This document shows positions 42,051-63,310 of a DNA stretch of 64,000 nucleotides, piece by piece. Each line of letters begins with the position of its first letter. The first letter of the stretch is position 1. The notes beneath the pieces are model-generated. The model was not told where the DNA came from. It did no database searches and saw only the letters and a program-made list of their open reading frames with translations. The position numbers were made by a program, and so were the translations under genes. Source of the DNA: Ostrea edulis (Eukaryota); NCBI RefSeq assembly GCF_947568905.1, contig NC_079165.1, positions 89,156,001 through 89,220,000 on the forward strand. The letters run 5' to 3'.

Positions 42051-43746
42051 GAAGTGTACTCATCTCATGGAATGAAGTTCTAGGGCTTGATACCATATGC
42101 CACTGATTTTCACAAACAAATGGTCAAATCATATAGAGTTTACCCTCCATAATAATGCCAACTACCTAACACCCAATGGTAGTCACACCTAGCTGTACTT
42201 CGAGAGCAGTGGAGTGAAGTGTGACAGGCTGGTCAAGATATCCCGGTGGTCAGATTAATTACAATAATTAAACTCAAGATTATCTAAATGTTTATACAGA
42301 AAGGAGCCCAAATAAATTTACAGAATTGAATTTCTTTTGACTGCTCAGTCAATTGTCAGTAATGAATTCGTTATATTGCCATCCCTGCCTTATATTGCTC
42401 AAATTGGTCTTGATCATTTTTCTCTTCCGCTGCGGTCACATGTAAAGATGCGCGCTCAGTACGATCATATGCAAATTTTACCTTCCGAAGAGTGCCGAGA
42501 ATTAACTGAGTTGTATTAATAGGTATTGAATTTGAGGACTTCACGATGTTTTGGGATTCACATGCTTAAAACATAGATATTATATAATCTAATCATATAA
42601 TTACAAGCAAAGTTATTACCGTAAATCAGACTTAATAATTTATGCTGAAGCGGTACATATGTATCTTTAAAGTTGCCAATATATAGATGGTGCACTGTAT
42701 AGCTGTATATGATTAAAATCACTATACAATACAGGACTTAAATAGAGAAAACACACATTTAGAACCTTAGTTTATCCATTGTTTGATTATACGAAGATAC
42801 TTGTGTAAGCAGTTTCAAATTTTATTTCGTGCACGTGTCGAGGTATATACCATCCCGGTTAATGGGATTTAACCGATCTCAATATGTCCCAGTAACTGGT
42901 TGGACACATCCGCACGGAATACAATATGTCTCTTTTATTGATTGAAACAGTCATTTATCATGTTTATTATACTGTGTTTGTGTTTATATATATAAATTAT
43001 CTACACCCACCTTATCATTAACGGTGTGTTCTACGTGAGAATTTTGTGATTATAATTCATATGAATAATTATATTAAATTTATATTCATAAAAAATATGA
43101 GTTGTCTTTCTTCACGATTTGAAATATGGTGGAATGATATCTACTCGATATAATGAATAAAGGTATGCCTATGACAAAATGAACCCGTGCGTATCACAGA
43201 CATCTTAAGTATGGGTACTACCCCCCCCCCCCCCCCCCCCCCCCCCTTAATTCAATTCAATTATTTATTGATTCACCAAGCATGTTGGCATACAATCATG
43301 TTACACAATATGAAATAGGGCCTATATAATGACAATAAACTAATTACTAACAGTTTATTTACATATCTGTAAATACAAGTATATACCGTGATATTAGACT
43401 ATGTGTGCAATTTAGTATTGCATATTACGTAACTGTAGTTATAGCACTCTACTTTTGGTGCGCAATTCAAAACATTCATGTAAAAATTCACAAAACCTTC
43501 TAGCATGAACTACATTGACAGGGTTGCTTAGTACTTTACAATGGTTTTCCTTTGATATATCATAGTCTGAATTGTAGATGTTCAAAGGGTAATATTTCTT
43601 TCTTATATCTTTCTACATGAAGCAGTCATATAAAAAATGTAACTCATCTTTAATGAACCCGTGTGTACCACAGGCATCTGGAGTATGGGTACTAATCCCC
43701 CCCCCCCTTTTGATGATTCCCTGTCTATCTCAACTCTTGATTTATG

Positions 43747-43950
43747 CAAGAGTTGGTCGGCCAATGTTATCTTGGAGAGAGCTGACGGAGAAAGATCGAA
43801 GAGTATGGAAGCTCTCAACTGCCAACCCTCATGACCGGAAAGAATGGAGATCTGAGGCGAGATCTGCCATGCATGCAGCCAGCCAGCCAGCCAGATACCT
43901 GGAAGGGGGCCCACTAGTATTGACACTACCCGTGATACTGCACGGAAATA
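43747..43950 (+). mobile_element. C-terminal fragment of an RTE-type LINE ORF
   Basis: GRPMLSWRELTEKDRRVWKLSTANPHDRKEWRS matches the recalled RTE C-terminal GRP..W...D......A.DR..WR motif. Confidence 0.6.
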
Positions 43951-44139
43951 AAAAGGAACCGACAACAATCGCTCCCCCCCCCCCCCCCCCCCCAGCTTTA
44001 AAGATTGGCCTTCTACCCGTATGATAAAATGTATTGAATGAATTCACATATCACATGATGATACCAATATGACAAACAAGATAATATACCTTTTATTATA
44101 CCAGTAGAAGGCCAATCTTAAAAATGAGCTGAAAAATTA

Positions 44140-44470
44140 AGATGCACGCTGCTGCTTTTCACGATACACATTGTGCACATCTTTTCATGATAAATACTGC
44201 TTTTCATGATGCAATGCTTTTCGGAAATACACATTGTGCACAGCTTTCAAGATACACATGCACTGCAGCTTTACATGATACAGTGAACAGCTTTTCACAA
44301 AACAATGAAGCTTTACATATGATACACACTAGCTATTTCATGATACACAGTGCAGCTTCTCACAATAGTGCACATCTTTTTGTGATACACAGTGCCTTTT
44401 ATGATACACATTGCTTTTCACAAGGCATTGTGCACAGCTTTTCATGATACACAATGCAGCTTTTTATTAT
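44140..44470. repeat. Degenerate minisatellite (GCTTTTCATGATACAC core)
   Basis: Repeated ttttcatgatacac/attgtgcaca motifs. Confidence 0.7.
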
Positions 44471-45574
44471 CCATACTCACATCACAATTAAAGATATCTT
44501 CTACAGAAGTCAAAACAAAAGACATGCATACTCAATAATTAATTTAATTTTCAATGGTCATGTTTCCAAGGATAAATTTTCCAACAAATCATTGACAATA
44601 AATTTCCTCTGAATATCTAACATACAAATAAATATTAAATAACAATAAAGTTAACCAAAAAGTATATATAGCCTCAATTACAGCTAGCCCCAAGCGAAAA
44701 AATTTTCAATTTTGAACCAAGCCCAATCGGAATTTAAAAAAAAAATTGTCATCGAGAACATTGTAATCAGAAAACTGCATTTTGTTGATGTAGGTTTACA
44801 AATTAAATGAATTTATAAAGAAAACTAATTTCTTGATGAAAAATGCAAACAATTAGCATCAAATCACTTAGAAATTTGGACTTTAGAACATCTTATTTGC
44901 AAACAAAACACCTTTTTTTATCATTCCGGGGGAAAATAAAAATTCATATAAAATAATTAGGATCTTGTGTCACTCTTTCGATGGTGAAATCATGCTTCAT
45001 ATGAAGTGCTTAAACAAGCCAGTAATTAATATTTTACTGTAATGAGCAAAGTGAAATTGGCAAAGTGGTTCTGAAGAAGATGTGAAAAGTGGATAAAGAG
45101 AAGACAACATACAAAATTCACTGAGGGCTTATGCAAGCTAAAAAACCCTGCCAACATTCAAAATTAAAATAATTGAAAGTCTAAGAATAAAAAAGTACTT
45201 TGGTTGCAAATAAAACAAATATTCACATAATATCCCAATACTTTTGTTTTCTGAATCATTTGTAAAGAGAATTGCATACATGTATGTCCTAAAAAGGACA
45301 TAAAAGTGCAAGGTGGATCTTATAATGAATTCGATACAATAATAATTCAATTACTAACCATATTGACAATAATGTTTAAATGAACTAATCAGAGATTTTA
45401 TATAAAATCCATCGCTTTTATGTAGTAGTGGCCAAGGTGAATATGAAATCAATTTATCTTGACGATATACATATATCTATACAACACAAATACACGTATC
45501 ATCTAAACCAAATAACAGTTAAGTCAAACAAATACAGCCTATTTTCTACAAACACACACAACAGCCTATACAAA

Positions 45575-45965
45575 ATATCGTTCACCTGAGCAGCAGTCCC
45601 TAGCAATAAACAAGCTTGAGCAAAACTACCATTATACAGTACAGGCAGCTTGGTTCAGGAATAACTTTTCAAACAACTGAAAATTCATTAATTATCAAAC
45701 TTAATTATTAAACCTGACAACAAATTCATTAATTAACATATGCCCAGTGGTTCTGGAGAAGATTTCCTCTATATTGGCATGTAAAACTTTGATCCCCTAT
45801 TGTTACACCACCTTACCCCCAAGGGGCCATGATCTGAACAAATTTTAATCTACTCTGCTTTCATATTCTAGCCCAGTGATTCTTGAGAAAAAGATTTTCT
45901 TTACATATTCGCATTGATCCCCAATTGTGGCTTCAACATACCTTCAGCTCAGGTGAACCAAAAAA
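45575..45965. mobile_element. HINE-like repeat with Cg170-like internal units
   Basis: CCCCAAGGGGCCATGATCTGAACAAA unit; TTCAGCTCAGGTGA..AAAAA end, also seen at about 57080-57100. Confidence 0.55.
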
Positions 45966-46058
45966 TGTACAGACTCTATATTAACCCAAGCATCCATATC
46001 TTTAAACAATTAACCTTCATTTCAACAAACATAAATTCCCTTCACCCACATATGTTAA

Positions 46059-46885
46059 TGGGGCATGGACACAATTTTAGATAAAAAATTACAAAATTTG
46101 TTTTTTCAGTTTTAATGTATAGAATGTTGCAATAAGTTATTTCTAATGGTCAGCAAATATTTGAATGTCAGTTCTCGAGGTACATGGGAGATACAGAGCT
46201 CACAATTCTTTGTTAAGTAAACCAGGCTCGTGCCATGTTTGTCTACATACATGTAGGTTAAATATACTAGTAAAAATTTCGTTTAAGGTGGCTCACTTCA
46301 GCCAGAAACAGTTTCTCAAATCAGTACGAATTGATTTAATTATAAGATATACAATAAGTATATATGCCAAAAAGACAAAAAATATACAAATTTGGATTAA
46401 AAAAAAAATTAAAAAAATTATTTCAACACATATGAACAAAAGACTGCAGGATTTGAACTTGAGATCTGCAGTTCACCAGCCCAATGCTTTAACTACTGAG
46501 CTACAATGATAGACAAACACATCAATCGATACAAATAATTTCACAAAACATTTAAATCGCCATCTTGTAACGTGGTGTTATACAGAGTATAAGCTTTAGT
46601 GTAGTGAGTTACCATATAGAAATTTTTCAAATTACAAGTCAATTCTAAATATAATTATAAAACAGTTTCTAGTGTTTGACACATCTCATTTTGTTTTAAA
46701 CATATTTTCTAGTGGGCAATTTCAATGTATACAAAAATTTGTAAATGCTGTATCTCACTTGTAACTCAACAACTGATATTCAAATCTTGGTTGACAATTA
46801 GACATACTTCAATTAAGCATTGTAAACAATACAAATGGGAAAATGACATTTGAAATTTTTCTGCTAACATCCTGTCCATGCCCCT
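46059..46885. mobile_element. TTAA-flanked MITE (GGGGCATGGACAC...GTCCATGCCCC) with a nested element at about 46285-46612
   Basis: TIRs and TTAA on both sides; related copy at 47751-48605. Confidence 0.7.
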
Positions 46886-46918
46886 TTAAAAACGGGTACA
46901 ATGATTGTTGGGAAGAAT

Positions 46919-47362
46919 GACAAGAGGCCCACGGGTTTAGTTTTCATACAGTATCGGCAAACTTATACATAAATACTATATACTAAGTTTGGCCCCATTT
47001 TACATTTTATATCCCCTTGTTCCAAAGATGCTTCATACCAAATTTGAATAGAATTGGAATGATAGTTATCATGAAGAAGTTAAAAATATATATTGCTCAC
47101 ATTTAATAACTGACCAAATTGGCCCCAAAACCCTTACACCTGGGATCATCAAATTTACAATTTTGGTATAGGAATACATGCTCTATCTAAATATCCATTT
47201 AGTTTCAATAGCAATAATTTCCGGTCTCCTTCACCTACAGATGCTACATACCAAATTTAGTCAAGATTGGCCCAGTAGTTTCTGGGATGAAGTTGTTAAC
47301 GGACGAAGCCAGACGCAGAGCAATAGCAATAGGTCACCTGAGTGAATCAGGTGACATAAAAA
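46919..47362. mobile_element. HINE-like repeat
   Basis: ACAAGAGGCCCAC start; terminal hairpin GTCACCTGAGTGAATCAGGTGAC. Confidence 0.6.
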
Positions 47363-47750
47363 ATATGATGTAGTCCACATGTGGACTAAAGTACCAAAAT
47401 TTTCAAATTTTTAATTAAATCTATTCTTTACAGCAAGTCCTTTATCAAAGGATGTTATATTAAACAATGAGAGTAAAGTGGACCTTTCTAAAATACCCAA
47501 ACTGAAAAGGAAAATCAGGGGAGTTCCACGGCAATGTATGTATTCCCATAAGAATTTCTGATGGAAACATTTTTTGAATTTAATTCATTACATGCTAAAA
47601 TGACATTCCCATCATACCTTTCTATACACTTATAGCCAAGAGAGAGTGCAAAAACAAGAATGAGGGGGATAACACCATGCACATCAATGCTGCAGCAGAT
47701 TGTCAACTTGAACAAATTGCAACAGTACCTAGCTCTTTTGAGGTTAGTAA

Positions 47751-48605
47751 ACGGGCATGGACACAATTCGAGCTGAAAATTTTCAAATTTTACTTTTTCA
47801 TTTTTAATGTTTACAATGCTTAACTAAGCTATTTCTAATTACTTTTTGTACATAATTACTTTAAAGCAGATTAATAAAATTTTAAAGTTATTAACTTTCC
47901 CTTAATGCTTGAAAACATTTGCATGCAAAAGAAAACAGTGAAAAGATTATTTAAAAAGTAAATGGTTGGGAATCCCAACATGAGGTATAAAAATATAATA
48001 AAGACAACTGTCTAAATGGCTGAAAAAGCATGAAATAATGAATTACTGAGGTATTTGATATTTCATTTGTCTTAAACTTATGGCACGGTACTGTTGTAAC
48101 CAAATACATAGCTTTACACAGATAAGATCACCGATGATCTAAAAGTCTGAACTGGTCACGTGACCAACTTAAATTGGCCGAGTGAATATTGTTTGTAAAC
48201 ACTGACTTAAAATCACATAATTCTAGTTAAAACAGGTGAAGTAACGTATGACATGCCGTAAAGCCTCATAAATAAGTACGTGCAATGATTTAACAATGTT
48301 TTTACAAGGCAGAAAAAAATTGTCGAAATTCAGACCATACAACTTTTAAAATACTAGAAATTTTTTTAAAGCTGATTTTTCAAATTACATGTTAATTCTG
48401 ATCACAATTAAACAGTTTCTAGTGTTTGTCATATCTCATTTTGCTTCAAACATATTTATGCAAACAATTTTTGTTCTGTTTCTTCTTATTTTTGCAGTAC
48501 TTTTACCTTTAATATACATGTATATATAGTTAAGCATTGTAAACAGTAAAACTAACTGGGAAAACAAATTGTAAAAAATTTAGAGCACACTGTGTCCATG
48601 CCCCT
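47751..48605. mobile_element. Second GGGCATGGACAC-TIR MITE
   Basis: Inverted termini; internal similarity to 46059-46885. Confidence 0.65.
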
Positions 48606-49133
48606 TTCAAATATGTACAATGGTACCTTTAAAGATCACCATCAAATGTACATTGCCAAATGGCTACGTACTCCTTTAAAATATATATTTGAAGATCCTT
48701 ATCTTATTCAGTTACAATCCTATCATGTTTGCAGAACATTCTGGCAAAACGGTTCCCTTTTCAAAAAACCTTTTCTAATCAATTTTTTTTCTATTTCACA
48801 GAGCTATTCAACACCACTTCAAAGCTACATGCAGCAGCTGCTGATATACAAAGGATTTACCCCTATTGGCAGCTATTTCAATAAATTTGTATTGAGAGAA
48901 TTTGCACAAGAAGATAAAAAACTTGAGGTACACAAGCTCTTTGAAACAGACAAAATTTAAAGATATGTACAAGCAAATACAAAATTCAACCAAACTTAAA
49001 ATCATTTACATGTAAGTATTTCAAGTTACTTTAATTTTTTTTTTTTTTACATTTACACAAAGCAAAAATTTTAACGAATGAGTATATATAATATATAGTG
49101 CTAACACAATATATAATGTGCTATGTATTACAG

Positions 49134-49919
49134 TTGGTGAAAGAAAATGCAGTAATGTAATGTGTACTGGTGTACTACGGTATGATGGACTGGAGCATTG
49201 CATATTCCATACAAGCCACACTCTCATCGCTTATGAAGTCCTATTTGGGTTTATGGACTTGTTCACCCGAAACAGGTGGTTATTTCTATGTCGACAGTCC
49301 ATATATAGTACATGAATGAATAAGAGTAGGAGTTACATGTAACTATGAGAGTATTTTTAGATAATATTCAGCACATTTGTCAATTACCTTAAGCAACACC
49401 ACCACCACCCACTCCCTGGAATTTTGGACAAAGAAATAAAAATGTCTGTAACTCTAGTGGATATCGAATGATAAACTGATGTACAATACTAGGACACTGG
49501 AAAATTGTGTATATGTCACGCATAACAACAATACTTTCCACATTTTTTTTATGTTTTAAATTCTACCATCCATTTCTAAATGTGAAAAAGTTTAACATGT
49601 TAACTTTTTTTTAACGTTTAAATAGAACAACTCTATACACATACTTCTTGTCACTGAAAGACAACCATGAGAGGGGAAATGACAAGAAGTTCCAGCAAAC
49701 CTTTTCATATGCACATTTCAAATTTGCATGGTATGGCTTCTTGGAGAAGCTCTGCTCCACCATCAATTTTGAGGAGGGATTCAGATGTATACAATGTGGG
49801 TCAGCACCAGATAGATTGATTATGGATGCCACCACATTAGCCCACAGAAAAAATTTAAAAACCTGGACCAACAACCTACAACAGATGGCATCTGATAATG
49901 TATTGCACATTCCGTACAG
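49134..49919 (+). pseudogene. Two in-phase exons of a cysteine-cluster protein resembling KDZ-transposon/HMGXB3-associated CxC proteins; truncated
   Basis: Exons 49134-49275 and 49626-49919: GERKCSNVMCTGVLRYDGLEHCIFHTSHTLIAYEVL...FRCIQCGSAPDRLIMDATTLAHRK. No intact downstream exon found. Confidence 0.55.
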
Positions 49920-50380
49920 GTATGTGACTTTGTATAGCAATAGATGATGATTCACTTACACATGATTTCATTCCGACAATACACAAACATCTACAACTGG
50001 CAATGAAGCATTGTATAAAGTTTCAAGTCTATCTGATATGTTATATTGGATGAGAAGCAATCACAAGACTTTGTGATAGACAAACGGTAAAATGGCCTTA
50101 CATACTAGTGTTGTGTTTTGAACTTCAAAATTATTTTTTTAATTTTCAAGGAAAGAGCGATTTCGCTCCAATAACAAAAACTTCCAAACACACGTTTTTG
50201 ACTGATTTCTAAATTATTTTTTCCTATCAACATTCCATTAATATCAATCATATAGCAGGTTTCTTAGAACCATGTCCAATACTTTTAAGCGATAAGGCTG
50301 TATAAATGTTTAAAACTATACAAATTTAAGACCCTCACATACTGTCATTGTTTTGCTATAAAGATTTGCATTTTACTTAC

Positions 50381-53300
50381 ACTTTCAATGATGCCCCCTC
50401 ATTTTCATATCGTCCATTCATGGAACAGAGAAAGTAAATGGACCGTGACTCTGCACATAACACAGCCAAATACCAATGAACCCTATAAATGTTTGACATA
50501 TTAAATATAACATTAAGGATAGACTGGGAAGTGGCATATGAAAAAGATATTTCTTCATCAAAATATGTGCACCTTTACTAACATAACTGCCTATTATGAA
50601 ACTACATACATCTACATACAATGATAATCAATATTATAGGGGTACGTGTTTGCCCTGTTCTTGACTTTGCATTCTTTATAGGATTTGTGAGATTGATCAA
50701 TTTACTTTTCACACATGTACATAAATAACCATATTTGATTTTCAGATTCACTATACACTGTACATTCAGCTGAAGAATTTTTCTAATATTTTCACTCAAA
50801 TGCTTTCATTTCCACGGACAACTCCTACTGTATAAAATTGTTACAAATACGAAATAACTGTAATACATGTTACTGATTGGTACAATGAGGATGGCTCCTT
50901 TCTCTAAATCCACATCTAAAGCAGCAAGGACATTTTCCACCCCCAAGTAATTACATCCTGTCATGTCCAGGGGTCTACGGTTGCTGTTATCAATAAAATC
51001 AGACTATGCATGTATTAAATTTTCTTTTCAATATTCAGAGAATAATATTTCTTAATAGCTATATGTGACATTAAAACATAGGCCCAAATATTAGTGCTAC
51101 CTGACAAAAGACTCAGGAGACCCTGATTAAAATCCCAAACTAGATTATCATATTTTGTCTTATCCTGCAGAGTTCATTCTCAAATATAATTCATATAATT
51201 ACAAAGTTTGAGATTATATTTTCTTATATCATTTGTACATGAGCAAACGTATTTGTGTAAAGTAATCCCCATTCTTAACGGGTAATCAAAAAAGTATATG
51301 TAAGACAAGAAGGCTTCTGGCACATGGTTTTCAATTTTGGGTATTCTTAGAATATGTGCTACATAATACTTATAACAACTTACAGCTTTCCTTTGACAAG
51401 CAATTTCTGTGCAAAGAATGTTTCTAAGATGTACACATTCTTTGAGGGGATTTGTTCTTTCATTCTTCTACAAATCAAACAATACAATAAGAGGAGTTCT
51501 ACAGATTTAAACTAGATGTCATCATAAGACAGTAATAATTACATGCAAGTCTTTGCTTTTTAATGAATATAGTTACCATATAATATACAGTACACTAAAC
51601 CATATATATTCCTGATGCATAAATCAAGATGCATTGAGTATTCTGTTGAGCAAGTGTCCAAGGGCCATCCCAACCCCCATAATTTTCTGATTAATGGTTC
51701 AGATTCCAACCCCTAAAGTAAATATATTCCTGTTGGATGTGACACAATGCAGTAAGTAGGACAACAGACACTATAAACTGCACTTTGTGCATTGAGAAAA
51801 AGATGGAGAAAAGATTCAACATTGATATGACCAACATCATTCTTGTACATACTGAAGTACCTGTAGGAAAGTGAAACATACCCTTGTACATGAAAAAAAG
51901 AAGCTATAAAACACTCCACTTTGATCCAAAGTAAAATATAGGAATATATCAGATCCCTGGATAAGAACAATGTCAAGATGATTAAATGATAATGAAGTAT
52001 TGTACAAAATTTTAAGTAAATCGGATAACCCATATAGGAGAAGTGTTCACAAGCTATTTTACACCATTCATCTTTCCTAGATCCACTAAAATTTAAGGAT
52101 AACAATGGAATAACCTTGTTCTGACAATATGCACATCTACAAATGTCAATGAAGCATTGTACAAAGTTTCATGTCTATCTGATAAACCATACAAGATAAG
52201 CGTTCACTAGATTTTGGACAGAAACAAAAAGTACTTTGGGAATCATTTTGAATGTCCAATAGATCCGTGACTCATATTATTACCTTGCTACAACATCTAT
52301 AACAGCATCTGTCAGCCACCTCATAGGGTTGAGTGACCGGATGTCAACTTCATATAAGTCAATCCCCATTTCTACTCTATGACTACAAGTAAAACAATCA
52401 TCTACATGTATATATTAAGTAATTTATCTATCATATAAAACTGATTCATTGTTTTGTGAAATGAGATGGTTTAGCATCTTATCTTTTATATATGTACATG
52501 CATACTCCACACATTTCATTTTGTATTTGTAGATCTTAGAGATGTAAAGATTACCCATGTCATCTGTTTAGTGTTGCAGTTGCATCCAATAACACTGGTT
52601 CTCAATGTTATGGCAGAGGATTTTCAAATCATTCCATAAAGTATTCCTTATTATGGAGTTTTTACTGAATCATCAACATGAATATTATGATACAGCAAAG
52701 CAATCAGAGAGAGATTTCAGTTAATCCAAATCTAACTTAGGAAAAAATAGGAATTCATAACCATCAAAATGAATTGAAAAAAAACCCAACAACAACAAAT
52801 AAATGTGAAGGAAGTATTTGAAAGCAACTAAAAAACTCAAAACAATATAGAAACACCCAGAAAGATCCTCACACTCTTTTCTCCATTCCTGGGAGTCTGT
52901 ATCTCTCCAACTCAATCACAGGTTTGCTGGCACTTTTATATCCTTTAATAAGTATATGATTTTTATCATTCAAACTGCATCTGAGTGAAGTGCATATCAT
53001 TAGAATAACACTTAGACATGTTAAAAGAGGTTAGTAAAAGCAGAGAGTAAGTATGCAGTCAATATGCATATTGTTTTTCCTTCCCTGTTCTACTTGGTTC
53101 TTCATCTGCTGTAGTACGGTAAACAAAAGAACTATTTCATTGCAAACATGTATGCATAACAAAAAATTTGCAAACGAAATGGCACTTTTGATAAAGAAAA
53201 CAATCACCTGCAATCGTGGAAACTGGCACAGACAAATTGAAATGACCATCTATGGAGAAAATGGTCAAAGTAGTTCTTGCAGAGTGCAGGCAAGGACAGG

Positions 53301-56300
53301 GTGGGAATTTTATTTCAGTTTCATTAACATGCAGGGAAATGTTGCACTCGAGACAGCCTGCTAATAACAGCATCCTGAAGTGTCCTAATATGAACCACAC
53401 AGAGCATAAAGAGCAGAAACAAACAAGACAAAAGGAAAGCATGCTAAATATAAAATAAAAATACATTACTTATGTATCAGAAATTTAACAGAAATCTGAA
53501 ACTCAGTATGAAATGAAGGAATTTTCAAGGACTAGATGGTGACACAAGCTATGTAAAAGACTTTAAAACTGAATTGGCACAATAACATTTCATTAACTTC
53601 ATTGTAATCTTTACCCTTAGGTTCCATCAAGGCTTCTTCAAAACTCTTATTGATGTCAGAATTTCCCCTTATATCTAAGAGTTTGTAAATCTCCTCAACT
53701 TCCCCCAGGCTATCACTCCGTATTATGCGCTCATACTATTTAAAAGTACAGAATTTGGATAAAAATTGACTTACCTTATAAAAAATTCAAAACTCAAATG
53801 GAACATTTTATGTTTCAAAATAAAAATTAATATTCCTAAAAAAAACAACCTGTTGCACATAATGGTCAATGTGGATCTGCCCATGGACCTTGCACAGAAG
53901 ATCCAGATGGGCTGGGCTGCATGGAGCATACATATTTACGCATTCTTCAATGGTACTGCACCCTATCAGGGTTGCCCACCCTTCTCTTTTGATAGTACTA
54001 TATTAAAACAGACATGTTTAATACATAATAAATGTGCAGCACACAACAAAATACAACAACCAGTATTAATGCACACTCAATAGCTGCATATAAAATTCAC
54101 TTGGTATATATACCTGGGTTGAACCAAAGTCAATGGAAAGGTTTTGGGGGATGAAAAGCCTTCCCTCACCATTTTAGTGGTGTAATGTGTTGTGACAATG
54201 GATGCAACTACATCAGGTGCATTGCTCTTTAACAATTTCGACTGAACGTCACTGAACTTCCCCTACAGTGTAGGTCAAAGACGTATATGCATATCAAACT
54301 TTTCATTTTAAATCTAACTTTATCATATAATTAATCAATCAAATCATATATTCAATATTAACAAATTGCATTCCCATAAATTCACTATAAATTATGAAAT
54401 TCAAATGTTACTTTGTTCAGAAGTCTTTCAATGGTGTATGTTGAAAGGTTCTCCTTAAGAAAAAAGACATGTAAAATTTAAATACAGAAGAAATTGTGTA
54501 TTGAAAATATCATGCATTTTTTTCTTTATCCGGGTACTTCTGCTGATTACAACTTATCCCTATACATGTACCTTTGAATCTTTACCAGACATGAGTTTGG
54601 TCTATCAGAGGCAAAAGTCATTACTTTCAAATTTTTGAACAGAGTTAACATTATGATATTTTCCATCAGTAATAATAGAGTAGAAGGAAAAGAAAGAGGT
54701 TACTGATATTTATTTTGCTGTTGATGTTTCAAAAGAAAGCTGGCTATTATAAAGGTGTGTTGTCCATCATTAATCTAATCTACAGTCTAGATAAAAGTAT
54801 ACTCATTTTTTAATACTACCTCTGCTGTCTAAGTAACACAGCATTATCCACTTAAGATAAAGGAAGATTTGTCAAATACTGAAGTACCTTTTCTAAGTAG
54901 ACAGAGGCATCCTCTGGATTCTCTCCATTCCCTTGCTCAATGTCCTTTTTTCATTCAGAAAAATATATGTGATTGACATAAATCATTATCCAAATCAAAT
55001 GATGTATATAAATGTATCTTTTTATTTCTTCATCAGAATTATTCTTTGAAAATTACTTACTATATTATGTGATGTCTGCAAACAAATGAACACCCGTCGC
55101 AATTCTTCTGCTGATATTTTGTGATTATTGACTATAAATCAAATAAAGAGACCCATCGGACCATAAATGTTAGAGTATTTTGCAACTAAATACATTATAA
55201 AGGATTTAAAAATAGATGCACTGGTTAAAATCAGTCCATTTATACCATTATGTCCTGATCAAGTTCTTATTAGTGTTTAACTATCGATAGACTATGTCAT
55301 TTATTTTCAGCACATACAATCCACAGAATTATGATCACTACCGGTACATAATAAACGAAAAATGTAGCTTCATCTTGATAGATTAATTGGTAACATTTAA
55401 TACGTTAATTCTTACTGGTTCTATTTGGGTCCTGGAAATTCACATCATCAGGCCAGCCCTCTGGTTTCTTACACTTCCAAATACATTTTGCTATGTAAGA
55501 ACAGACTGAGATAATAATTCATAAAGGAAACATATAAAACAGTCAAAACAGTAATAGCTAGCAAGCTTATATGAAAAACAATAAGTGATTTTCATCTCCC
55601 TCATAGATGAAAATAACTAATGATTCAAAAGAAATTTGAATTGTCTCCGACACTTCAATGTAAGCATGTTTTATATTAGTATTAGATCTGTGGATGAGTG
55701 TGCGTAACAGGCATTATTAAAAGAGTAAAAGAAAAAGGAGGATAGACCAAAATAACCCAAATATATTGTTTCCTCAGAGTAAGCTCATTGAAAGACAAAG
55801 TTTTATAATACATGTATATATTATAAGCAGGTTTGTTCACATACAATATTTTAAATACTTCATTTCTTGATCAACAAATTTCTAGCTATATACTGTACCT
55901 TTCAATATCCCTCTCAGAACAAGAGGCAGTAATCTCCGCAGCACTGACTCTGGAGTACTTTCTGCATTTACTGACAACAAAGCCCTCCAGTCTTCTTCTG
56001 GAGTTGGTGTTCGATACTCTATTGATCATTATAACCATATAAGCCTACTAATTCTACAGGTTGAGAAATAAAGAGGGAGGGAAAGAGAGAGTTGATATTC
56101 TTTAGTTAATATTCAAATTTCAAAAGTATTGTAGGTGTGAAAATGTAACATAATCAAATTTTTTTCAAATTCATATACAGCAAATTTCAAGAGAGAAAAA
56201 AAAGAAAACAGATCAAAGAAAATACAGACTACCAATCATTGGATTAAGATTTTGACATAGTCCACAATACTCAATGGAATCACCTTGCTAATACTAGAAT

Positions 56301-57721
56301 TGTGCAATCATGTGGACCCACCTTTACATTAAATTTCAAAAATATTTGATAATGTTTCACTAATTGCAGTAAAATTTATATAACTCAGAAAAACTTTGAT
56401 CATAAGAGTTAATTTGAGCCAGGTTAGCTAAACATTTATGTAAACTCCAGGTCAATATCGGTAAATAAATGATAGAAAAGAGAAATACCTTTAGAAGATA
56501 GCAACATTTCAGCATGGTGCTCCATGCTGGCAGAGGTCATTTGCTTCGCAACATCATGACATATGTCCCGCAACCATGGTGAGACTTAAAAATAAAATAT
56601 CAAATCTATTTAGCTAAGGACTCTATGACAGAATATTCCATTTTACTTCATAGAAGCAAGCACAGGAAACATATTAAGCAAAAGTGTGTTATGCAACAAT
56701 TAACAAAATTGAAATACAACACAAAGTAACATAAGCAACAGGCCCATGGGCCACATTGCTCACCTGAAGACTTAAAAGCAAGGAGTGAAATTTTTTTGAT
56801 ATTACAGTTTATGAGGTTGATCGCACATAAATTAAACAAAAAATACCCTAGTGTGTCTTGGAAATCTGTTACCTCAACATGCAACCAAGGGTTGGATCAT
56901 GCTATAAACAAATCTTTGATTAAAGTAAGTGAGGATACTTGCATACAGATTCAACAATCTGCACCCCTATGGTTCTTGAACACATTTTGGAAAGTTTCCC
57001 CAAACACAACTGATGTTAAAATCCCTACCATCATCCTTCCCAGCCATCAGAAGTCATGGTACAAAAAGAATACTGTGTGCTTCAGCTCAGGTGAGCAAAA
57101 AATTAATATCAAATTGGAAATAAAATTAATACTTTATTTTTAAGCAATGATAATGAACAGTTAATAGTAAAAACACTAAACAAGACAACATAGTACCCTG
57201 TCCCTCCGTCTTCCCATTCATTGTATACAAAAACATAATGGGAATGTCAGGTTCCTCCTCCATAATTTCCTTGATCTAAAAGTTAAAACTAAATTCTGAC
57301 AAAACATGTCCAAAATTTGAAACAAGTCTGAAAGAAATCTTGTTACTATCAACCTGTTCAAATGTAAGCAAAATTTTTTCTGTTTCTTTTTGACATTTTT
57401 CTTGACATCTATGAAATAACTGTCTCTTGTTTTGATGTGTGTCATAGGTACATTTCACATTTTGTTATGGACTATGGTTTGATCAGTTAGCATTTGTAAT
57501 TAACTTTCTTTGTTGATATCACATCAATATATTGTTCAAGCATAAATCATATTTCACTTCTTGAGAAAGAAACTGGCATTGTAATCATTGATGGCATTGA
57601 AAGTGAAACTATAAATTTCTTTTTAACATAATCAATAAATGGCTCATCAATTTACCTTATTTGAAAGTCTTTTCAATTTTTCTCTTCTTCTCCTCCTGAT
57701 TTTCTCTTCTTCTTTTCTAAC
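50381..57721 (-). CDS. Uncharacterised multi-exon gene: NRF1-like DNA-binding segment, Cys-rich linker and Ulp1/SENP-like (peptidase C48) domain; 3' half may be decayed
   Basis: Eleven phase-consistent exons, 378 open codons: 57656-57721, 57197-57275, 56489-56584, 55899-56018, 55416-55490, 55061-55131, 54888-54944, 54114-54262, 53850-53997, 53615-53735, 53208-53360. Ulp1-like exons: 52284-52382, about 51600-51860, 51384-51467, 50867-50983, 50381-50482. Start codon and the 52.4-52.95 kb splicing not resolved. Confidence 0.7.
56716..57102. mobile_element. HINE-like repeat in an intron of the minus-strand gene
   Basis: AACAGGCCCATGGGCCACATTGCTCACCTGA start; TTCAGCTCAGGTGAGCAAAAA end. Confidence 0.65.
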
Positions 57722-58624
57722 CTACATTCATTAAAAATAAAATAAATAAAGTGTTTGGAAAGTACCATTTATTATTTTGTCTTGTCTTTTTATATTATCT
57801 AATAAGAACTGGTTCTTGCTGATGTCAATGTACCAATAAAGCATGAAAGTTACTGCTTATTTTATTTTCCTCGCCTAGCCGCTCATTTAACTACATTATC
57901 AACATGGTGGTAGCGGTTGGATTGTTTCTAAATGTTTTATTTAGACAAGCTTTCTCAAAATAAGTTTTTGTATTATTGCTTATAATATATCTTGAAAGAA
58001 ACGTTCACACCGTAAAACGTTTTAAATAATTTAGCTTAGTATTCTACATATTTAGACTACTAGAAAGAACTTCTGCATGCTGTGACCAATCCACTGTTCA
58101 TTCAAGCTGACATACCAAACTTTTTATTTGTGACATCAAGTGTTTTGAGTACAAGAGATGACTAGCATAAATGCTGTATATTTCCAATCTTGACAATCAA
58201 TGTTCCATGGTCTTACCGAAGCACTAGCTTGTACTCCGAGCTCTAATTACTAAAGCGCGCGAAATTATCCGAGCTAAATCTAAACCTTTAACAAGAATAT
58301 TTTTCACGCCAATCCCAGAAGTCCCTTGTCAAAAATGGCCAACGAATGTGAACTTCCGTTGATCTGCGGCCTCCTACCTCGAAAATTCAGTGCACCATTA
58401 GGCGTAATGTTTAACGAAATGCAAAGTTTATGAAAGGCAGGCTAAGATGATGAAACGGGCTGTTTCAGCTACCTAATTTCATTCATACGCATGTACTGAG
58501 TATTTGGCAAATAGATATTATTTAAATTGAACCTGATCAAAGCATGAGCATTACAAAATATGTTCATATTTGATGTTACGCTTGCTCAAACGGTAGCACC
58601 GTCAACATATTATTGTTCCTGTGG

Positions 58625-58919
58625 GATAATGCATAAATTTTTACAGAAGAATAAACTAGTAGCCGGCACTTTCTAATCCGAATTTCCTAAAAATAAAAAC
58701 CTAGTAATAACTGGTTTAAATAGATCACATATGCTACCAAATACATGTGATTTCCAAAGGTATGATATATTCAAGTTACATGTATTCTTATCCATATACA
58801 ACTATGATAATGCATAAATTTTCAAAGAATAAACTAGTAGCCGGCACTTTCTAATCCGAATTTCCTAAAGACAATAACCTATTAATAACTGGTTTATATA
58901 GATCACATATGCTACCAAA
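58625..58919. repeat. Direct duplication of about 115 bp with 181-bp period
   Basis: GATAATGCATAAATTTT...CACATATGCTACCAAA at 58625 and 58806. Confidence 0.85.
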
Positions 58920-59639
58920 CGTTTCAAAATGAGAATTCATATCCAGTTTATAAGTGGACATTTGATAAAACTGGAAATATTTACTTGTCATCGATTACTT
59001 TACTTATTTAACGTACATATTTCTCTCGAGGCGCATCAACCACGTTACAATCCATCGCTGCCATATTGTTTTCTGCGGTCTTGATCTGGCGCATGCCTAT
59101 TGCATACTTACGACCAGTAACTGGGACTTTTTCAGTTCAGTTAAATCCCGTTAACTGGGACTATAAATACCTCACGTGTCGCATGTTTTGACAGTTCATA
59201 TTTTCGCGGATTTTTTTTCGGACTTTTTCAATGGAAATTGCATTCCGAAGGAAGTCGCCATTTTGATTGTTTATAAATATCTCGAGGGATTTTACTGTAT
59301 CCCGACGCTAGAGGTAAGATTCATAAGACGAATTATTAAAATGTATATTCATATTGATATTTTATGCATTATTGGGAGCAAACAGTTTAATTATCCCTTA
59401 TACTGTGGCGATGAAGCCGGGGGAATGTAAAGTAAAGTAAATTTTATTTAAAGTCGGCACTATATACATTCAACATGTCAAACCGACTATCACATTGTAC
59501 ACTACACTGTACTACTACCACCTGACTGCTGCTACTACTACTGTCCAACATGTTAACGTTATCATTGCACCTTTTCATTTTATTGCGGAGTGTTGAATTA
59601 CGAACGAATAGTCTAATAACCTTTCTCTACACTTTAAGG

Positions 59640-59991: not shown

Positions 59992-62659
59992 ATGAACATG
60001 GATCTGAACCACTTGGAGTCAATCTTCCCTTCCCTTGTGGAGTCAGGCATCTTACTGTCCTCTCTGGCCGTGATTTTTGTCTTTTGGAATCACAGTTGTC
60101 TGGACACTTCACTGCTGAGACTACTGAAGTGTCACCTTCCAAGATGCAGGAATTTCTGTTTGGTCCTAACAGCACTTGTAATGATGAACAATAACTTAAT
60201 GAAAAATTTTGCTCTCACCATGGACAGCTGTAGGATTGCTGTTGTTGCACTTGTTGTCCAAATATCATTCTGGCTGCAGAGTAAGCCTGTCTCCAATAAA
60301 TGTATTGGGACCCAAAATATTCAGATCGTCGACAAATCAGTCGGTGGATCCCCAGTAACACACAGGGATCAGGCGAGCAGTGCCTCCACCTGCTGTAGAG
60401 TCGGGGTACCTCGCTATCTCCTGTCCCCATCCTCCTCCTCAGGACCTCAGTCTGCAGTGAACATTGAAGAGGAGTTGAGAAAGCCTTATGTGGAGGCTTT
60501 CAGGTATCTTAACGACGAGAAAGATGTTACCAACAAGGATCTTGTGACTGCCATTCAGTACCTGGACACACTCAATGGAGGTAAGTTTAGTATATTCATT
60601 TTTATACACCCATCATCAGACAGGATGTATTATGTTATGGCGCTGTCCGTGCCTCCGTTCGTGTGTCCATAGGATGTCATGTTTTCATAACCTTTTTCCG
60701 TAACTGATGCATTTACAGCATTGAAATTTGGTCACAATTTTTCCCTCAAGAAGCGAAAGAGGGAGTTTGCATTTCAGCTGGATTGGTACATCATGACCTA
60801 CTTTAGGGCTAAAAGTAGGTCAACTGTTTGCCATACTTTTTTCATTACAGATACAGATATTGCCTTGAAATGTAGTCACAAGCTTTCTCTCGGAGGAATA
60901 TACAAATTCAATTTGCATTTCAGCTGAATTGGTGTATCATGACCTACTTTAGGGCTAAAACTAGGTCAAAGAGTTTTCAGATTTTTTTTTCATTATGGAT
61001 ACAGGTGTTGCCCTGAAATGTGGTCACAACGTTCTTCTCAGAGAAATACAGATTCAATATACATTTCTGAATCAGCTTAATTGGTGCACCATGACATACT
61101 TTAGGGCTTAAAGTAGGTCAAAAAGTTTTCTTGACTTTTTCTCACAATGGATACAGATATTGCACTGAAATTTTGTCATCACTGTCGGACAGGCGTATGA
61201 TGTACCGTTTACAGTGTTCGAAATTGGTTTAAAACATAGTATAGACCACTGGTCTATGCGAAAACAAGATGACGTAGACCTCATCGAAGTGGCATAGACC
61301 GCAATATTGGGGGGAAAAACCCACAAATTTAAAACATTTTCATTTATTTCTAATGTACTTAGAAAGCATATTTTCTTTCCATTTCAATATCCTCCTTTCC
61401 TCATAATGTTTATCAGGCAGCGGCTTACCATGCAGGGTCCTTTGGGATAACATTATTGCTTTAAATCAAGAAAATCGGCATAGACAATTTGGACCATCTC
61501 AATTACAATTGGCGTAGACCAGTGTCATTTGACACAGACTCTGTCTATCGGTCAATGGTTAATTTTGAACACTGCGTCTACAGTACTCTTGTTGTTTTAA
61601 TATGGTTTCCTTAATATCAAATAACTTCAAATTTAATGGTTTCACCATCGTCAGAAACCCACAGTTGATTACCCTTCATTCTTCTCTCCATCACCCGTGG
61701 GTCCATTCCTTCCTACTCGCTCGTTCTCATGAATTATTGATGAGTCAATTTGATTGGGCGCTCATGGTATACCCTGAGCGAATTTGTCCAATCAACAAGA
61801 CGCTTTCAGCCCAATTTCGGTATACAATTCTTGTTTTAGCAAAGTTAAGTTGGTGCTACCTTAAAAACAGAAGAGTTCCATTATCATAACGATTACTTTG
61901 AGTGGACGATATTTTTAAATATTTATTCCTAAAATGAACAAGTAGGAATGAATGGACCCACGGGTGATGGAGAGAGGAAGGAAGTATAATTAACTGTGGG
62001 TATCCGACAATGTGGTTTCACCAACAAATGCAATTTTGTTTGACAGTAAATTCCTGGACAGCTAATTTATATTTAATATTCCTCTTGAATGAAAACTATG
62101 TTGTTAAGCATTTGATTTTGAGGTCTTTTCCCACCACCAAAACAACGAAAACTGGTGGTCAGTGAATAGGGAAGAAACCGCAGTATATACGCAACACATC
62201 TCACAATAAATAATGCATACAATGTAGTTAAAAATATATTTTAAAAAACCAAACAAGAAACCTTAATTAAGTTGTTTTATGTTCATTCACCGGCAATTTT
62301 TTACAGAATCTCTGTTCTTCTGTTTAGTGTTTATGTATTGTATGCAGTAGTCTGACGTAATTATGAAAGATTTGCTGTAAAATTCAATGAATGCTATTTA
62401 TAGACCCTAGACATTATCAGATAAATTGACTGCTGTTCACATGTTTGGTCTTTAACAGGGATAGAGGTCCACAGAGGTGCTGCGAATTTGAATGATGCAG
62501 TGGATCACATCCAGTGGATGCGACAGAAGTCACGCCTGGATGACTCTGGACTTCCCCGGGAATACTCTTATGAGGAGCTCCGTGACATCGTGGTGGAGGG
62601 GAATGGTTATTCCCTAGAGGATTTTGAGAGAGTGCTGGAAAAATGCCTGGAAAACAATG
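59992..62659 (+). CDS. Uncharacterised protein, two exons visible, continues beyond 62659
   Basis: Exon 59992-60580 (ATG after TAAAG, ends G|GTAAGT, phase 1) joins exon 62459-62659 (phase 1 to 1) in frame: ...IQYLDTLNGGGIEVHRGAANLNDAVDHIQWM...; hydrophobic N-terminal part. Confidence 0.65.
60598..61200. mobile_element. HINE-like element with about 3 internal tandem units of about 150 bp
   Basis: TTTTTATACACCC...CTGTCCGT start; repeated CATGACCTACTTTAGGGCTAAAAGTAGGTCAA. Confidence 0.7.
61212..61574. mobile_element. Short-TIR element (CAGTGTTCGAAATT...AATTTTGAACACTG)
   Basis: 14-bp inverted termini with 1 mismatch; no TSD seen. Confidence 0.5.
61640..62030. mobile_element. Foldback element, about 80-bp inverted arms
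   Basis: CTCTCCATCACCCGTGGGTCCATTC at about 61684 and its reverse complement at about 61950. Confidence 0.65.
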
Positions 62660-62992
62660 GTTAGTCTTGTGATAGGCAGATGTCTTGTAAACCTTTTTAA
62701 AACATTCTGGATCCACCCCTGGGTTTGTAGCTCATTAGACAGAGGACTCATTCATTTGACCCAGCACAAGTATATTCAATACAAGCTACTTACTGAAAAA
62801 AATGTACAGGTCAGCCTATTTAACATGTAATTCAGTTTGCACTGTTTAGGTCTCTGATCTAAGAGTTATTCCTCTTTAATCATGTTCATTGCTGGACAAA
62901 TACACAACTTTGTGATGCATCAGTCATCACTAAGACTGCTGATGAAGAGTTTTGCCCCTTTGATTTCTGGACAATGTGATATTATGCTTTAA

Positions 62993-63310
62993 GGTAGTAC
63001 TCTACATCGTCATAATGGCTGACTTCCTTTAAAAACATGGATGAAAAAATCGATATCAGCAATATTTGTCTTTTCCTTTTCCATTAAAATACCTAGCCGA
63101 GTAGCTCAGTAGGTTTGAATACCGACTGCTGGACTGTAGGTCGCAGGTTCGAGTCCGGCAGGGGTTTTAAATTTTTTTCAGATTACCTTCTACTGAAACT
63201 GTATTTTTTGACAAAATAAAGTAAATTTGAAAATTTTCAACTTCAAAATATTGTTGTACATATCCTCCACTTTTCATCTACATCAAATTTCTCTGGTGTA
63301 GCATACCTCC
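62993..63310. mobile_element. TTAA-flanked element with an internal tRNA-like A/B-box segment
   Basis: TTAA at 62989-62992 and 63311-63314; imperfect GG-starting TIRs; TAGCTCAGTAGG and GGTTCGAGTCC at about 63100-63160. Confidence 0.6.

What the first reader, a model, noticed from the sequence alone, without database searches (positions are those of the whole stretch)
50381..57721. NRF1/EWG-like DNA-binding segment apparently fused to a Ulp1/SENP-like protease domain
The spliced N-terminus reads RRRRREKLKRLSNKIKEIM...ESVLRRLLPLVLRGILKAKCIWKCKKPEGWPDDVNFQDPN, paralleling the recalled NRF1 DBD pattern (LRAFIPEMLK...KPIWWPEDIPW). The C-terminal exons read IRSLNPMRWLTDAVID..., VYILETFFAQKLL, DLEKGAILIVPISNMVHWYLAVLCAESRSIYFLCSM, a peptidase C48 pattern. 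The usual catalytic Asp (Y.DS) is Cys here, so it may be a pseudo-protease. Two Ulp1-like N-terminal segments seem to be present. Eleven in-phase exons argue for recent coding constraint. I do not recognise this architecture.
Basis: partly seen in the sequence, partly recalled or inferred. Interest (0 to 1): 0.7.

Follow-up and report, generated by a model that had tools for sequence, protein, structure and literature searches.

The report
Transposon-borne NRF1-like/Ulp1 gene, truncated copy
The stretch is a real 17-exon oyster gene that joins an NRF1-like DNA-binding fold to a Ulp1/SENP-type protease, but it sits inside a multi-copy cut-and-paste transposon, and this copy has lost the exons that carry the protease's catalytic cysteine.

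Summary
They belong to a 17-exon open frame (59094 to 50381) with AG/GT borders and consistent phases throughout.

- **C-terminal half:** Ulp1/C48. The sister copies' annotated products hit PF02902. The catalytic-Cys exon alone hits it at E=2e-5.
- **N-terminal half:** no sequence-profile match. A confident sub-model (pLDDT 77) has the human NRF1 DNA-binding domain as its top PDB match by two aligners (Foldseek prob 0.84-0.97; VIA Z 7.0). This is moderate support.
- **Fusion:** supported by conserved linking exons, phases and selection (pN 0.2-0.3, pS about 0.75 against Magallana gigas). NCBI splits the locus into two genes in three places, and I found no RNA run.
the gene lies in a transposon-like unit (42840-59173) with 61-bp inverted ends and a 7-bp target duplication. 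It has about 6-7 copies per genome, and four copies in two genera share the same sharp end.
- **This copy:** broken at 50090, so it lacks the Gln/Cys exons.

The closest parallel is the plant VANC-Ulp1 (Kaonashi) genes of VANDAL transposons. The scan had noted this transposon reading and a paralogue before.

The parts
42833..42839 (.). Target-site duplication, left copy (ACGTGTC)
   Evidence: Same 7 bases directly outside both inverted ends
42840..42900 (+). Terminal inverted repeat, far end of the element; holds two copies of the near-palindrome TCCCAGTTAMYGG
   Evidence: 80-83% identical to the reverse complement of 59113-59173; motif sites
47430..49925 (+). Remnant of a second, convergent gene ('K gene', Cys-cluster protein): exons about 47430-47558, 47629-47745, 48799-48936, 49645-49925. 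Its downstream part is missing
   Evidence: Colinear with Logan contig L004 and 58-72% identical to proteins P0013-P0015; no Pfam family
50090..50090 (.). Breakpoint: similarity to the complete sister copy L003 ends here, about 290 bp after exon E9
   Evidence: Window 59174-50090 matches L003 9921-19134 at 99.7-100%, nothing beyond
50381..50482 (-). Exon E9: C48 catalytic His ('VHWYL') and Cys in place of the triad Asp. Donor GTAAGT is kept but no next exon exists in this copy
   Evidence: identical in L003
50867..50983 (-). Exon E8 (C48 core)
51384..51467 (-). Exon E7 (C48)
52284..52382 (-). Exon E6 (start of C48 domain; the NCBI 199-aa model starts at its Met)
52873..54262 (-). Five 'middle' exons: M1 54262-54114, M2 53997-53850, E5 53735-53615, M3 53384-53208, M4 52942-52873. 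About 220 aa, no known family, not annotated in O. edulis
   Evidence: Conserved with M. gigas with the same splice phases; pN 0.31 vs pS 0.75; no Pfam hit
54385..54453 (-). Alternative last exon used by the NCBI 236-aa model (N-terminal module only)
   Evidence: P0011 ends with this exon's peptide
54888..54944 (-). Exon E4c, phase 0-0, could be a cassette exon
   Evidence: In P0011 and P0008
55061..56018 (-). Exons E3 56018-55899, E4 55490-55416, E4b 55131-55061: the NRF1-DBD-like three-helix domain
   Evidence: Model mb761241f8cc8 (pLDDT 77) has NRF1 as top PDB match by Foldseek and VIA-align
56489..59094 (-). Exons x0 59094-59017 (ATG), E1 57721-57656 (basic stretch), E2 57275-57197, E2b 56584-56489
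   Evidence: Match P0011 exactly; colinear with M. gigas
59113..59173 (-). Terminal inverted repeat at the gene's 5' end, two motif copies. The ATG lies 80 bp inside the end
   Evidence: Similarity to L001, L002 and L003 starts exactly here; assembly unitigs of three runs end at 59173
59174..59180 (.). Target-site duplication, right copy (ACGTGTC)

Best explanation
The stretch is most of a 17-exon gene carried by a large terminal-inverted-repeat DNA transposon of oysters (this copy: 42840-59173, 16.3 kb). In complete copies the gene can be read as one protein of roughly 630 aa. It has a basic N-terminal stretch and a three-helix domain with the fold of the NRF1 DNA-binding domain. A conserved middle region of about 220 aa of unknown fold follows, then a C-terminal Ulp1/SENP (C48) peptidase with His, Gln and Cys kept and Cys in place of the triad Asp. 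Shorter products holding only the N-terminal module are also annotated.

Inferred, not shown: the DNA-binding part recognises the near-palindromic 13-bp motif that marks the element's ends and internal arrays. It would bring a SUMO-type protease to the element's own chromatin, helping transposition or countering SUMO-dependent silencing. This is much like the VANC-Ulp1 (Kaonashi) proteins of plant VANDAL transposons.

The copy in this window is an internally deleted derivative. A break at 50090 removed the exons for the catalytic Gln/Cys and the downstream part of a convergent second gene. At most it can make the N-terminal module or a protease-dead protein.
For: **Gene structure**
- 17 exons have AG/GT borders and a consistent frame.
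- They match NCBI protein P0011 and are colinear with M. gigas loci.

**Selection**
- pS is about 0.75 (saturated) against pN 0.22-0.31 in all three parts.
- In exon M1, 10 of the 16 conserved residues before the first Met use different codons in the two species.

**C48 identity**
- Neighbouring or continuing products of 299, 399 and 199 aa all hit PF02902.
- Exon E11 of L003 alone hits PF02902 at E=2e-5, 25 bits, above the 20.7 cut-off.

**NRF1-like fold**
- Foldseek ranks 1-3 are 8k4l_B, 8k4l_A and 8k3d_A, with prob 0.84-0.97 and 20-22% identity.
- VIA-align ranks 1-2 are 8k3d_A (Z 7.0, rmsd 2.9, 79 of 105 residues) and 8k4l_B (Z 6.8).

**Transposon**
- The same sharp end (GAGGTATTTATAGTCCC...) occurs in two M. 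gigas copies that are 99% identical over more than 21 kb.
- It also occurs in a second O. edulis copy, 99.7% identical to the window but with different flanks.
- The window has an inverted copy of the end plus a 7-bp direct repeat.
- Unitigs end at 59173, and depth inside the element is about 6-7 times that of the flank.
- The motif occurs twice per end and in arrays after the gene in L001-L003.

**Truncation:**

**Analogue:** the VANC/KIU description in PMC13317346.
Against: - No transcript evidence: no RNA run held the stretch.
- NCBI models split the locus into an N-terminal gene and a C48 gene in all three annotated copies.
- No sequence profile links the N-terminal part to NRF1.
- Foldseek E-values are 0.2-0.6, and Z 7 is within the range that helical models reach by chance (note). 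The rank-3 hit has Z 6.0.
- The second gene has no recognisable transposase domain, so the superfamily is unknown.
- The right end of complete copies was not reached. Target duplication was seen for one insertion only.
- DNA binding, protease activity and the anti-silencing role are all untested.
Confidence: 0.6

Rival explanations
1. Two separate neighbouring genes, not a fusion. A small nuclear protein (N-terminal module, 150-258 aa) and an independent Ulp1 protease are transcribed apart.
For: - All three NCBI annotations split them: 189+299, 258+399 and 236+199 aa.
- N-only models end in different read-through or alternative last exons in both species.
Against: - Exons M1-M4 between the two O. 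edulis models are under purifying selection.
- M1 has a conserved AG acceptor in phase 0 and no Met in its first 30 conserved codons in O. edulis.
- The M. gigas 399-aa model starts 9 bp after the end of the 258-aa model. Its first exon has 3 codons ('MNK'), which looks like a model-building device.
- All 17 exons keep one frame.
Confidence: 0.25
2. An ordinary host gene family copied by segmental duplication, not a transposon gene.
For: - Intron-rich structure with 17 or more exons.
- Strong purifying selection between genera.
- Annotated as genes by NCBI.
- The two M. gigas copies share even a nested LINE fragment.
Against: - The identical end point of similarity appears in four copies of two genera.
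- The window has an inverted repeat of that end with a 7-bp flanking direct repeat.
- Depth is about 6-7 fold and unitigs break exactly at the end.
- Copies within a species differ by 0.2-1%, while synonymous sites between species are saturated.
Confidence: 0.12
3. The NRF1 resemblance is a chance likeness of a small helical domain. The N-terminal module has some other role, such as protein interaction.
For: - No Pfam or PDB sequence match.
- Foldseek E is 0.2-0.6. VIA Z 7.0 is only 1 above the next unrelated chain.
- The full-length module model was poor, pLDDT 48.
- An earlier follow-up on a paralogue could not show the kinship.
Against: - The match covers nearly all of the NRF1 DNA-binding domain at 18-22% identity.
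- Even the poor model listed 8k4l_A with the highest TM-score among its 30 rows.
Confidence: 0.35

Closest known systems
VANC-Ulp1 / Kaonashi (KIU) genes of plant VANDAL (Mutator-like) transposons
   Same: Both are transposon-borne accessory genes that join a DNA-motif-recognising part to a Ulp1 domain. In both, the element carries short repeated motifs in its non-coding DNA, and the Ulp1 part is conserved (PMC13317346).
   Different: This one is from an animal (bivalve). Its DNA-binding part has an NRF1-like fold, not VANC. The element has clear inverted ends, whereas VANDALs are non-TIR. No anti-silencing activity has been tested here.
Zisupton / KDZ transposons (Ulp1 domain on the transposase)
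   Same: Both are large animal cut-and-paste elements with a Ulp1-type protease and Cys-cluster proteins.
   Different: Zisupton makes 8-bp target duplications (PMC12730594), whereas here there are 7 bp. Here the Ulp1 domain is on a separate gene from the Cys-cluster gene. Pfam found no KDZ or CxC family.
NRF1 / Erect wing / P3A2 transcription factors (DNA-binding domain, PDB 8K3D, 8K4L)
   Same: A three-helix domain with a long loop between helices. It is the best structural match in the PDB.
   Different: There is no detectable sequence-profile similarity. The MADS-like dimerisation domain of NRF1 (PMC10810270) was not recognised. The loop is about 10 residues shorter. The base-contacting residues could not be aligned here.
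Cellular Ulp1/SENP SUMO proteases (Pfam PF02902)
   Same: The family carries the catalytic His, Gln and Cys motifs ('HW', 'QQ.N..DCG').
   Different: The triad Asp is replaced by Cys in both species. The gene is carried on a mobile element. In this copy the Gln/Cys exons are absent.

Membership tests
Peptidase C48 (Ulp1/SENP), PF02902 | Profile match above Pfam's gathering score | tested here: met
   For the family: E11 of sister copy L003 scores 25 bits against the 20.7 cut-off. The annotated products of L001, L002 and L003 carry PF02902. For the window's own exons singly there is no hit. The joined model was not searched, by rule.
Peptidase C48 (Ulp1/SENP), PF02902 | Catalytic His, Asp, Gln and Cys all present | tested here: not met
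   The window copy has His but no Gln/Cys exon. Complete copies have His, Gln and Cys, with Cys at the Asp position. I placed that position by spacing from the His, as an inference.
NRF1/EWG DNA-binding domain (PF10491) | Sequence-profile match to the family | tested here: not met
   No PF10491 hit at E up to 10 for P0004, P0008, P0011 or sub-ranges. No NRF1 chain appears in PDB sequence or profile searches.
NRF1/EWG DNA-binding domain (PF10491) | Fold of the DNA-binding domain (three helices plus a long loop, NRF1 201-284) | tested here: inconclusive
   NRF1 is the top hit by two methods, but with Foldseek E 0.2-0.6 and Z 7.0.
NRF1/EWG DNA-binding domain (PF10491) | Base-contacting residues (R206, N242, R244) and the MADS-like dimerisation domain | not testable with these tools
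   No residue-level structural alignment is given. The region before the domain is modelled at pLDDT about 50.
Terminal-inverted-repeat DNA transposon | Inverted ends, target-site duplication, several copies with the same ends in different places | tested here: met
   61-bp inverted ends and a 7-bp duplication in the window. The same end occurs in L001, L002 and L003 with unrelated flanks. Depth is about 6-7 fold. Target duplication was seen for one insertion only.
Terminal-inverted-repeat DNA transposon | A recognisable transposase | tested here: inconclusive
   The convergent Cys-cluster gene has relatives but no Pfam family. Its catalytic part is missing from this copy and lies outside the fetched loci.
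Zisupton/KDZ | 8-bp target duplication; KDZ transposase and CxC domains | tested here: not met
   7-bp duplication. No KDZ or CxC Pfam hits. The Zisupton figure is from PMC12730594.

The most novel reading that the evidence does not exclude
Oysters harbour an active family of large DNA transposons whose accessory protein uses an NRF1-type DNA-binding domain to recognise the element's own palindromic 13-bp motif arrays. It would deliver a SUMO protease there, as an animal counterpart of plant VANC-type anti-silencing factors. It would also be the first sign that the otherwise isolated NRF1/EWG DNA-binding fold has transposon-borne relatives, which bears on the fold's origin.
Probability: 0.2. 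Interest if true: 0.75.

Novelty: new variant of a known kind. Interest (0 to 1): 0.5.

Why it matters
Ulp1 proteases carried by transposons are known in plants and fish, but their role is unclear. Here one is joined to a domain whose best structural match is the NRF1 DNA-binding domain. The element also carries conserved arrays of a palindromic motif that could be its binding site.

That gives a testable model: a transposon brings a SUMO protease to its own DNA. It also offers a possible transposon relative for a transcription-factor fold that has had no known kin.

For annotation, it shows that the public oyster gene models split one probable gene in two and leave five conserved exons unannotated. 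It also shows that the copy in this window is a broken, protease-dead derivative.

Tried and rejected
- **Exon-by-exon Pfam scan of the window.** It gave only a weak hit of exon E4 to PF11001 (YDR124W-like helical bundle, E 0.012; 0.03-0.09 on P0011 sub-ranges, none on M. gigas). I treat this as unproven.
- **Big HMMER search with exon E3.** It found only 7 proteins, none full length.
- **Three word searches.** They never reached the annotated C48 proteins because of the length window. The attempt through the 122-aa ORF of L001 found only ORF fragments.
- **RNA evidence.** No RNA run holds the stretch, so splicing could not be observed.
- **Whole N-terminal module model (pLDDT 48).** Its Foldseek search was uninformative. 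Only the sub-domain model worked.
- **PDB sequence search with exon E9 alone.** Nothing relevant.
- **Search for the last two exons in the window.** I used low-stringency tblastn and a motif scan. They are absent.
- **The 49615-49944 plus-strand ORF as an antisense artefact of a missing exon.** Rejected, because it has 58-72% identical relatives and further colinear exons.
- **Zisupton/KDZ label.** Considered and not adopted (7-bp duplication, no KDZ/CxC hits).
Full report
**Observation.** The window is AT-rich animal DNA. Earlier notes of this scan identify it as flat oyster.

- The seventh spans a splice junction. It is reproduced by the NCBI protein P0011, 'uncharacterized protein LOC130054736 [Ostrea edulis]', 236 aa.
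- No exon has a paralogue elsewhere in the window. The 'two Ulp1-like N-terminal segments' were therefore not found.

**Gene structure.** A whole-library HMMER search with one exon found the M. gigas proteins P0004 and P0008. Their loci are L001 and L002.

- The window gene is colinear with L001 exon by exon.
- Nucleotide similarity is confined to the exons.
- Working out each border in both species gives 17 exons from 59094 to 50381. All have AG/GT borders, the same phases in both species and one continuous frame of 1709 nt.
- I read the split codons at the junctions by hand, and none is a stop.

**Selection.** Counted exon by exon against L001, synonymous sites are saturated (pS about 0.75). 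Non-synonymous differences are 0.22 in the N-terminal module, 0.31 in the middle exons and 0.22 in the C48 exons. All three parts have therefore been kept as coding sequence.

**C-terminal half.**
- The gene that follows or continues the N-terminal model is annotated with PF02902 Peptidase_C48 at all three loci, with products of 299, 399 and 199 aa.
- Window exons E6-E9 are base-for-base identical to those of L003.
- The exon with 'VPQQRNSFDCG' in L003 hits PF02902 by itself (E 2e-5, 25 bits, cut-off 20.7). Its M. gigas counterpart does too.
- The His exon reads 'VHWYL...CSM', with Cys 17 residues after His, where Ulp1/SENP enzymes have Asp. M. gigas also has Cys there. This placement rests on spacing and on my knowledge of the family, not on a profile alignment.

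**N-terminal half.**
- Pfam finds nothing for P0004, P0008 or P0011.
- PDB sequence and profile searches find no NRF1 chain.
- A model of the whole module was poor (pLDDT 48).
- A model of P0011 residues 76-198 reached pLDDT 77 and pTM 0.62, with residues 35-123 at 75-93.
- Foldseek against 350,542 PDB chains puts the three NRF1 chains first. 8k4l_B has E 0.23 and prob 0.84. 8k4l_A has E 0.31, prob 0.97, 81 columns and 21% identity. 8k3d_A has E 0.62 and prob 0.87.
- VIA-align against 48,161 representative chains, run independently of Foldseek, also puts NRF1 first. 8k3d_A has Z 7.0, rmsd 2.9 Å and 79 of 105 residues aligned (model 39-123 on NRF1 182-281). 8k4l_B has Z 6.8, and the next chain has Z 6.0.
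- The NRF1 paper describes the domain (201-284) as three helices with a long loop that holds base-contacting residues (PMC10810270). The model has the same layout.
- None of these scores is significant on its own. Still, the family named in advance came first in two whole-PDB searches. I count this as moderate support for a shared fold, not as membership.

**Is it one protein?** NCBI splits the locus in every copy. N-only models end in different read-through or alternative exons. No RNA run could be found.

Four points argue for a long product as well:
- The five exons between the two O. edulis models are conserved and constrained.
- M1 has a conserved phase-0 acceptor and no Met in its first 30 codons. 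In those codons, 10 of the 16 conserved residues use different codons in the two species.
- The M. gigas 399-aa model begins 9 bp after the 258-aa model ends, with a 3-codon first exon.
- The frame is continuous whether or not exon E4c is included.

I think a fused product is likely (about 0.7), alongside short N-only products.

**Transposon context.**
- L001 and L002 lie on different M. gigas chromosomes. They are 99% identical from one sharp point (L001 9879) for more than 21 kb.
- Similarity between the window and M. gigas starts at the same point, window 59173.
- P0011's own locus L003 turned out to be a second O. edulis copy. It is identical to the window from 59174 to 50090 (19 mismatches in 8546 bp), with unrelated flanks on both sides.
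- The window holds an inverted copy of the end at 42840-42900. The 7 bases ACGTGTC directly flank both ends.
- In three DNA runs of organism A, which I take to be the window's own species, assembly unitigs stop exactly at 59173. Depth inside the element is about 6-7 times that of the unique flank, for example 122-128 against 18-21 in X1.
- Each end has two copies of the near-palindrome TCCCAGTTAMYGG. Arrays of the same motif follow the gene in L001, L002 and L003, although the surrounding non-coding DNA cannot be aligned between the genera.

Together these show a multi-copy, recently active terminal-inverted-repeat element. Its superfamily is open. Zisupton makes 8-bp duplications (PMC12730594). 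The convergent second gene (exons 47430-49925) has relatives (P0013-15) but no Pfam family.

**This copy is broken.** L003 and L001 have two further exons after E9, and the second carries the catalytic Gln and Cys. Nothing in the window matches them. Identity with L003 stops at 50090.

The E9 donor GTAAGT is intact. Without splicing the frame reaches a stop one codon later. The second gene also ends abruptly near 49925-49944. An internal deletion that removed the 3' parts of both convergent genes explains the layout. An earlier first-stage note on 49134-57721 proposed the same.

**How it may work (inferred).** The product would be an element-encoded protein that binds the motif arrays through the NRF1-like domain. 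It would carry a Ulp1-type protease that acts on SUMO-modified chromatin or transposition proteins at the element. The closest described case is the VANC-Ulp1 (Kaonashi) group of plant VANDAL transposons. There VANC recognises short motifs in related elements and lifts silencing, and the role of the Ulp1 part is unknown (PMC13317346).

**Verdict.** The gene is real and the domain reading is largely right. The key context was missed: it is a transposon gene, and this copy is truncated and protease-dead. I rate it a new variant of a known kind (transposon-borne Ulp1 genes), of moderate interest.

Noticed in passing
window 58188-58778 (first intron of the gene): This stretch has 100-800 times the depth of the rest of the element in all runs, so a very high-copy repeat is nested here. 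The two O. edulis copies also differ by a 108-bp repeat unit at 58626-58735.
   Followed up: no
window 49971-50060, 52096-52203, 51840-52046: Copies of a short interspersed repeat lie in an intron and right at the deletion breakpoint. The breakpoint may lie in or next to such a repeat.
   Followed up: partly
window 60552-62127 and 62916-63300: Flanking DNA holds very high-copy repeats, including a 152-bp tandem repeat at 60770-1178 (2.7 copies). Many alternative joints appear in the run contigs.
   Followed up: no
L002 19142-19150: The M. gigas 399-aa Peptidase_C48 model starts with a 3-codon exon ('MNK') 9 bp after the previous gene model ends. This looks like an annotation split of one gene.
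   Followed up: partly
L003 23181-24319; L002 26506-26937: Fragments of reverse transcriptase of LINE type (FADD / YADE motifs) are nested downstream of the C48 gene. In L003 the fragment interrupts the 46-bp-period motif array.
   Followed up: no
window 43175-44021: Plus-strand ORFs with poly-proline runs are repeated at 43180-43233 and 43654-43707. The same repeats occur elsewhere in the window and in the M. gigas loci.
   Followed up: no
run X5 (organism B), laid on window 57715-59087: A second organism's contigs carry pieces of the element with 0-3 differences but none of the unique flank. At its low depth this does not show whether the insertion is absent there.
   Followed up: partly
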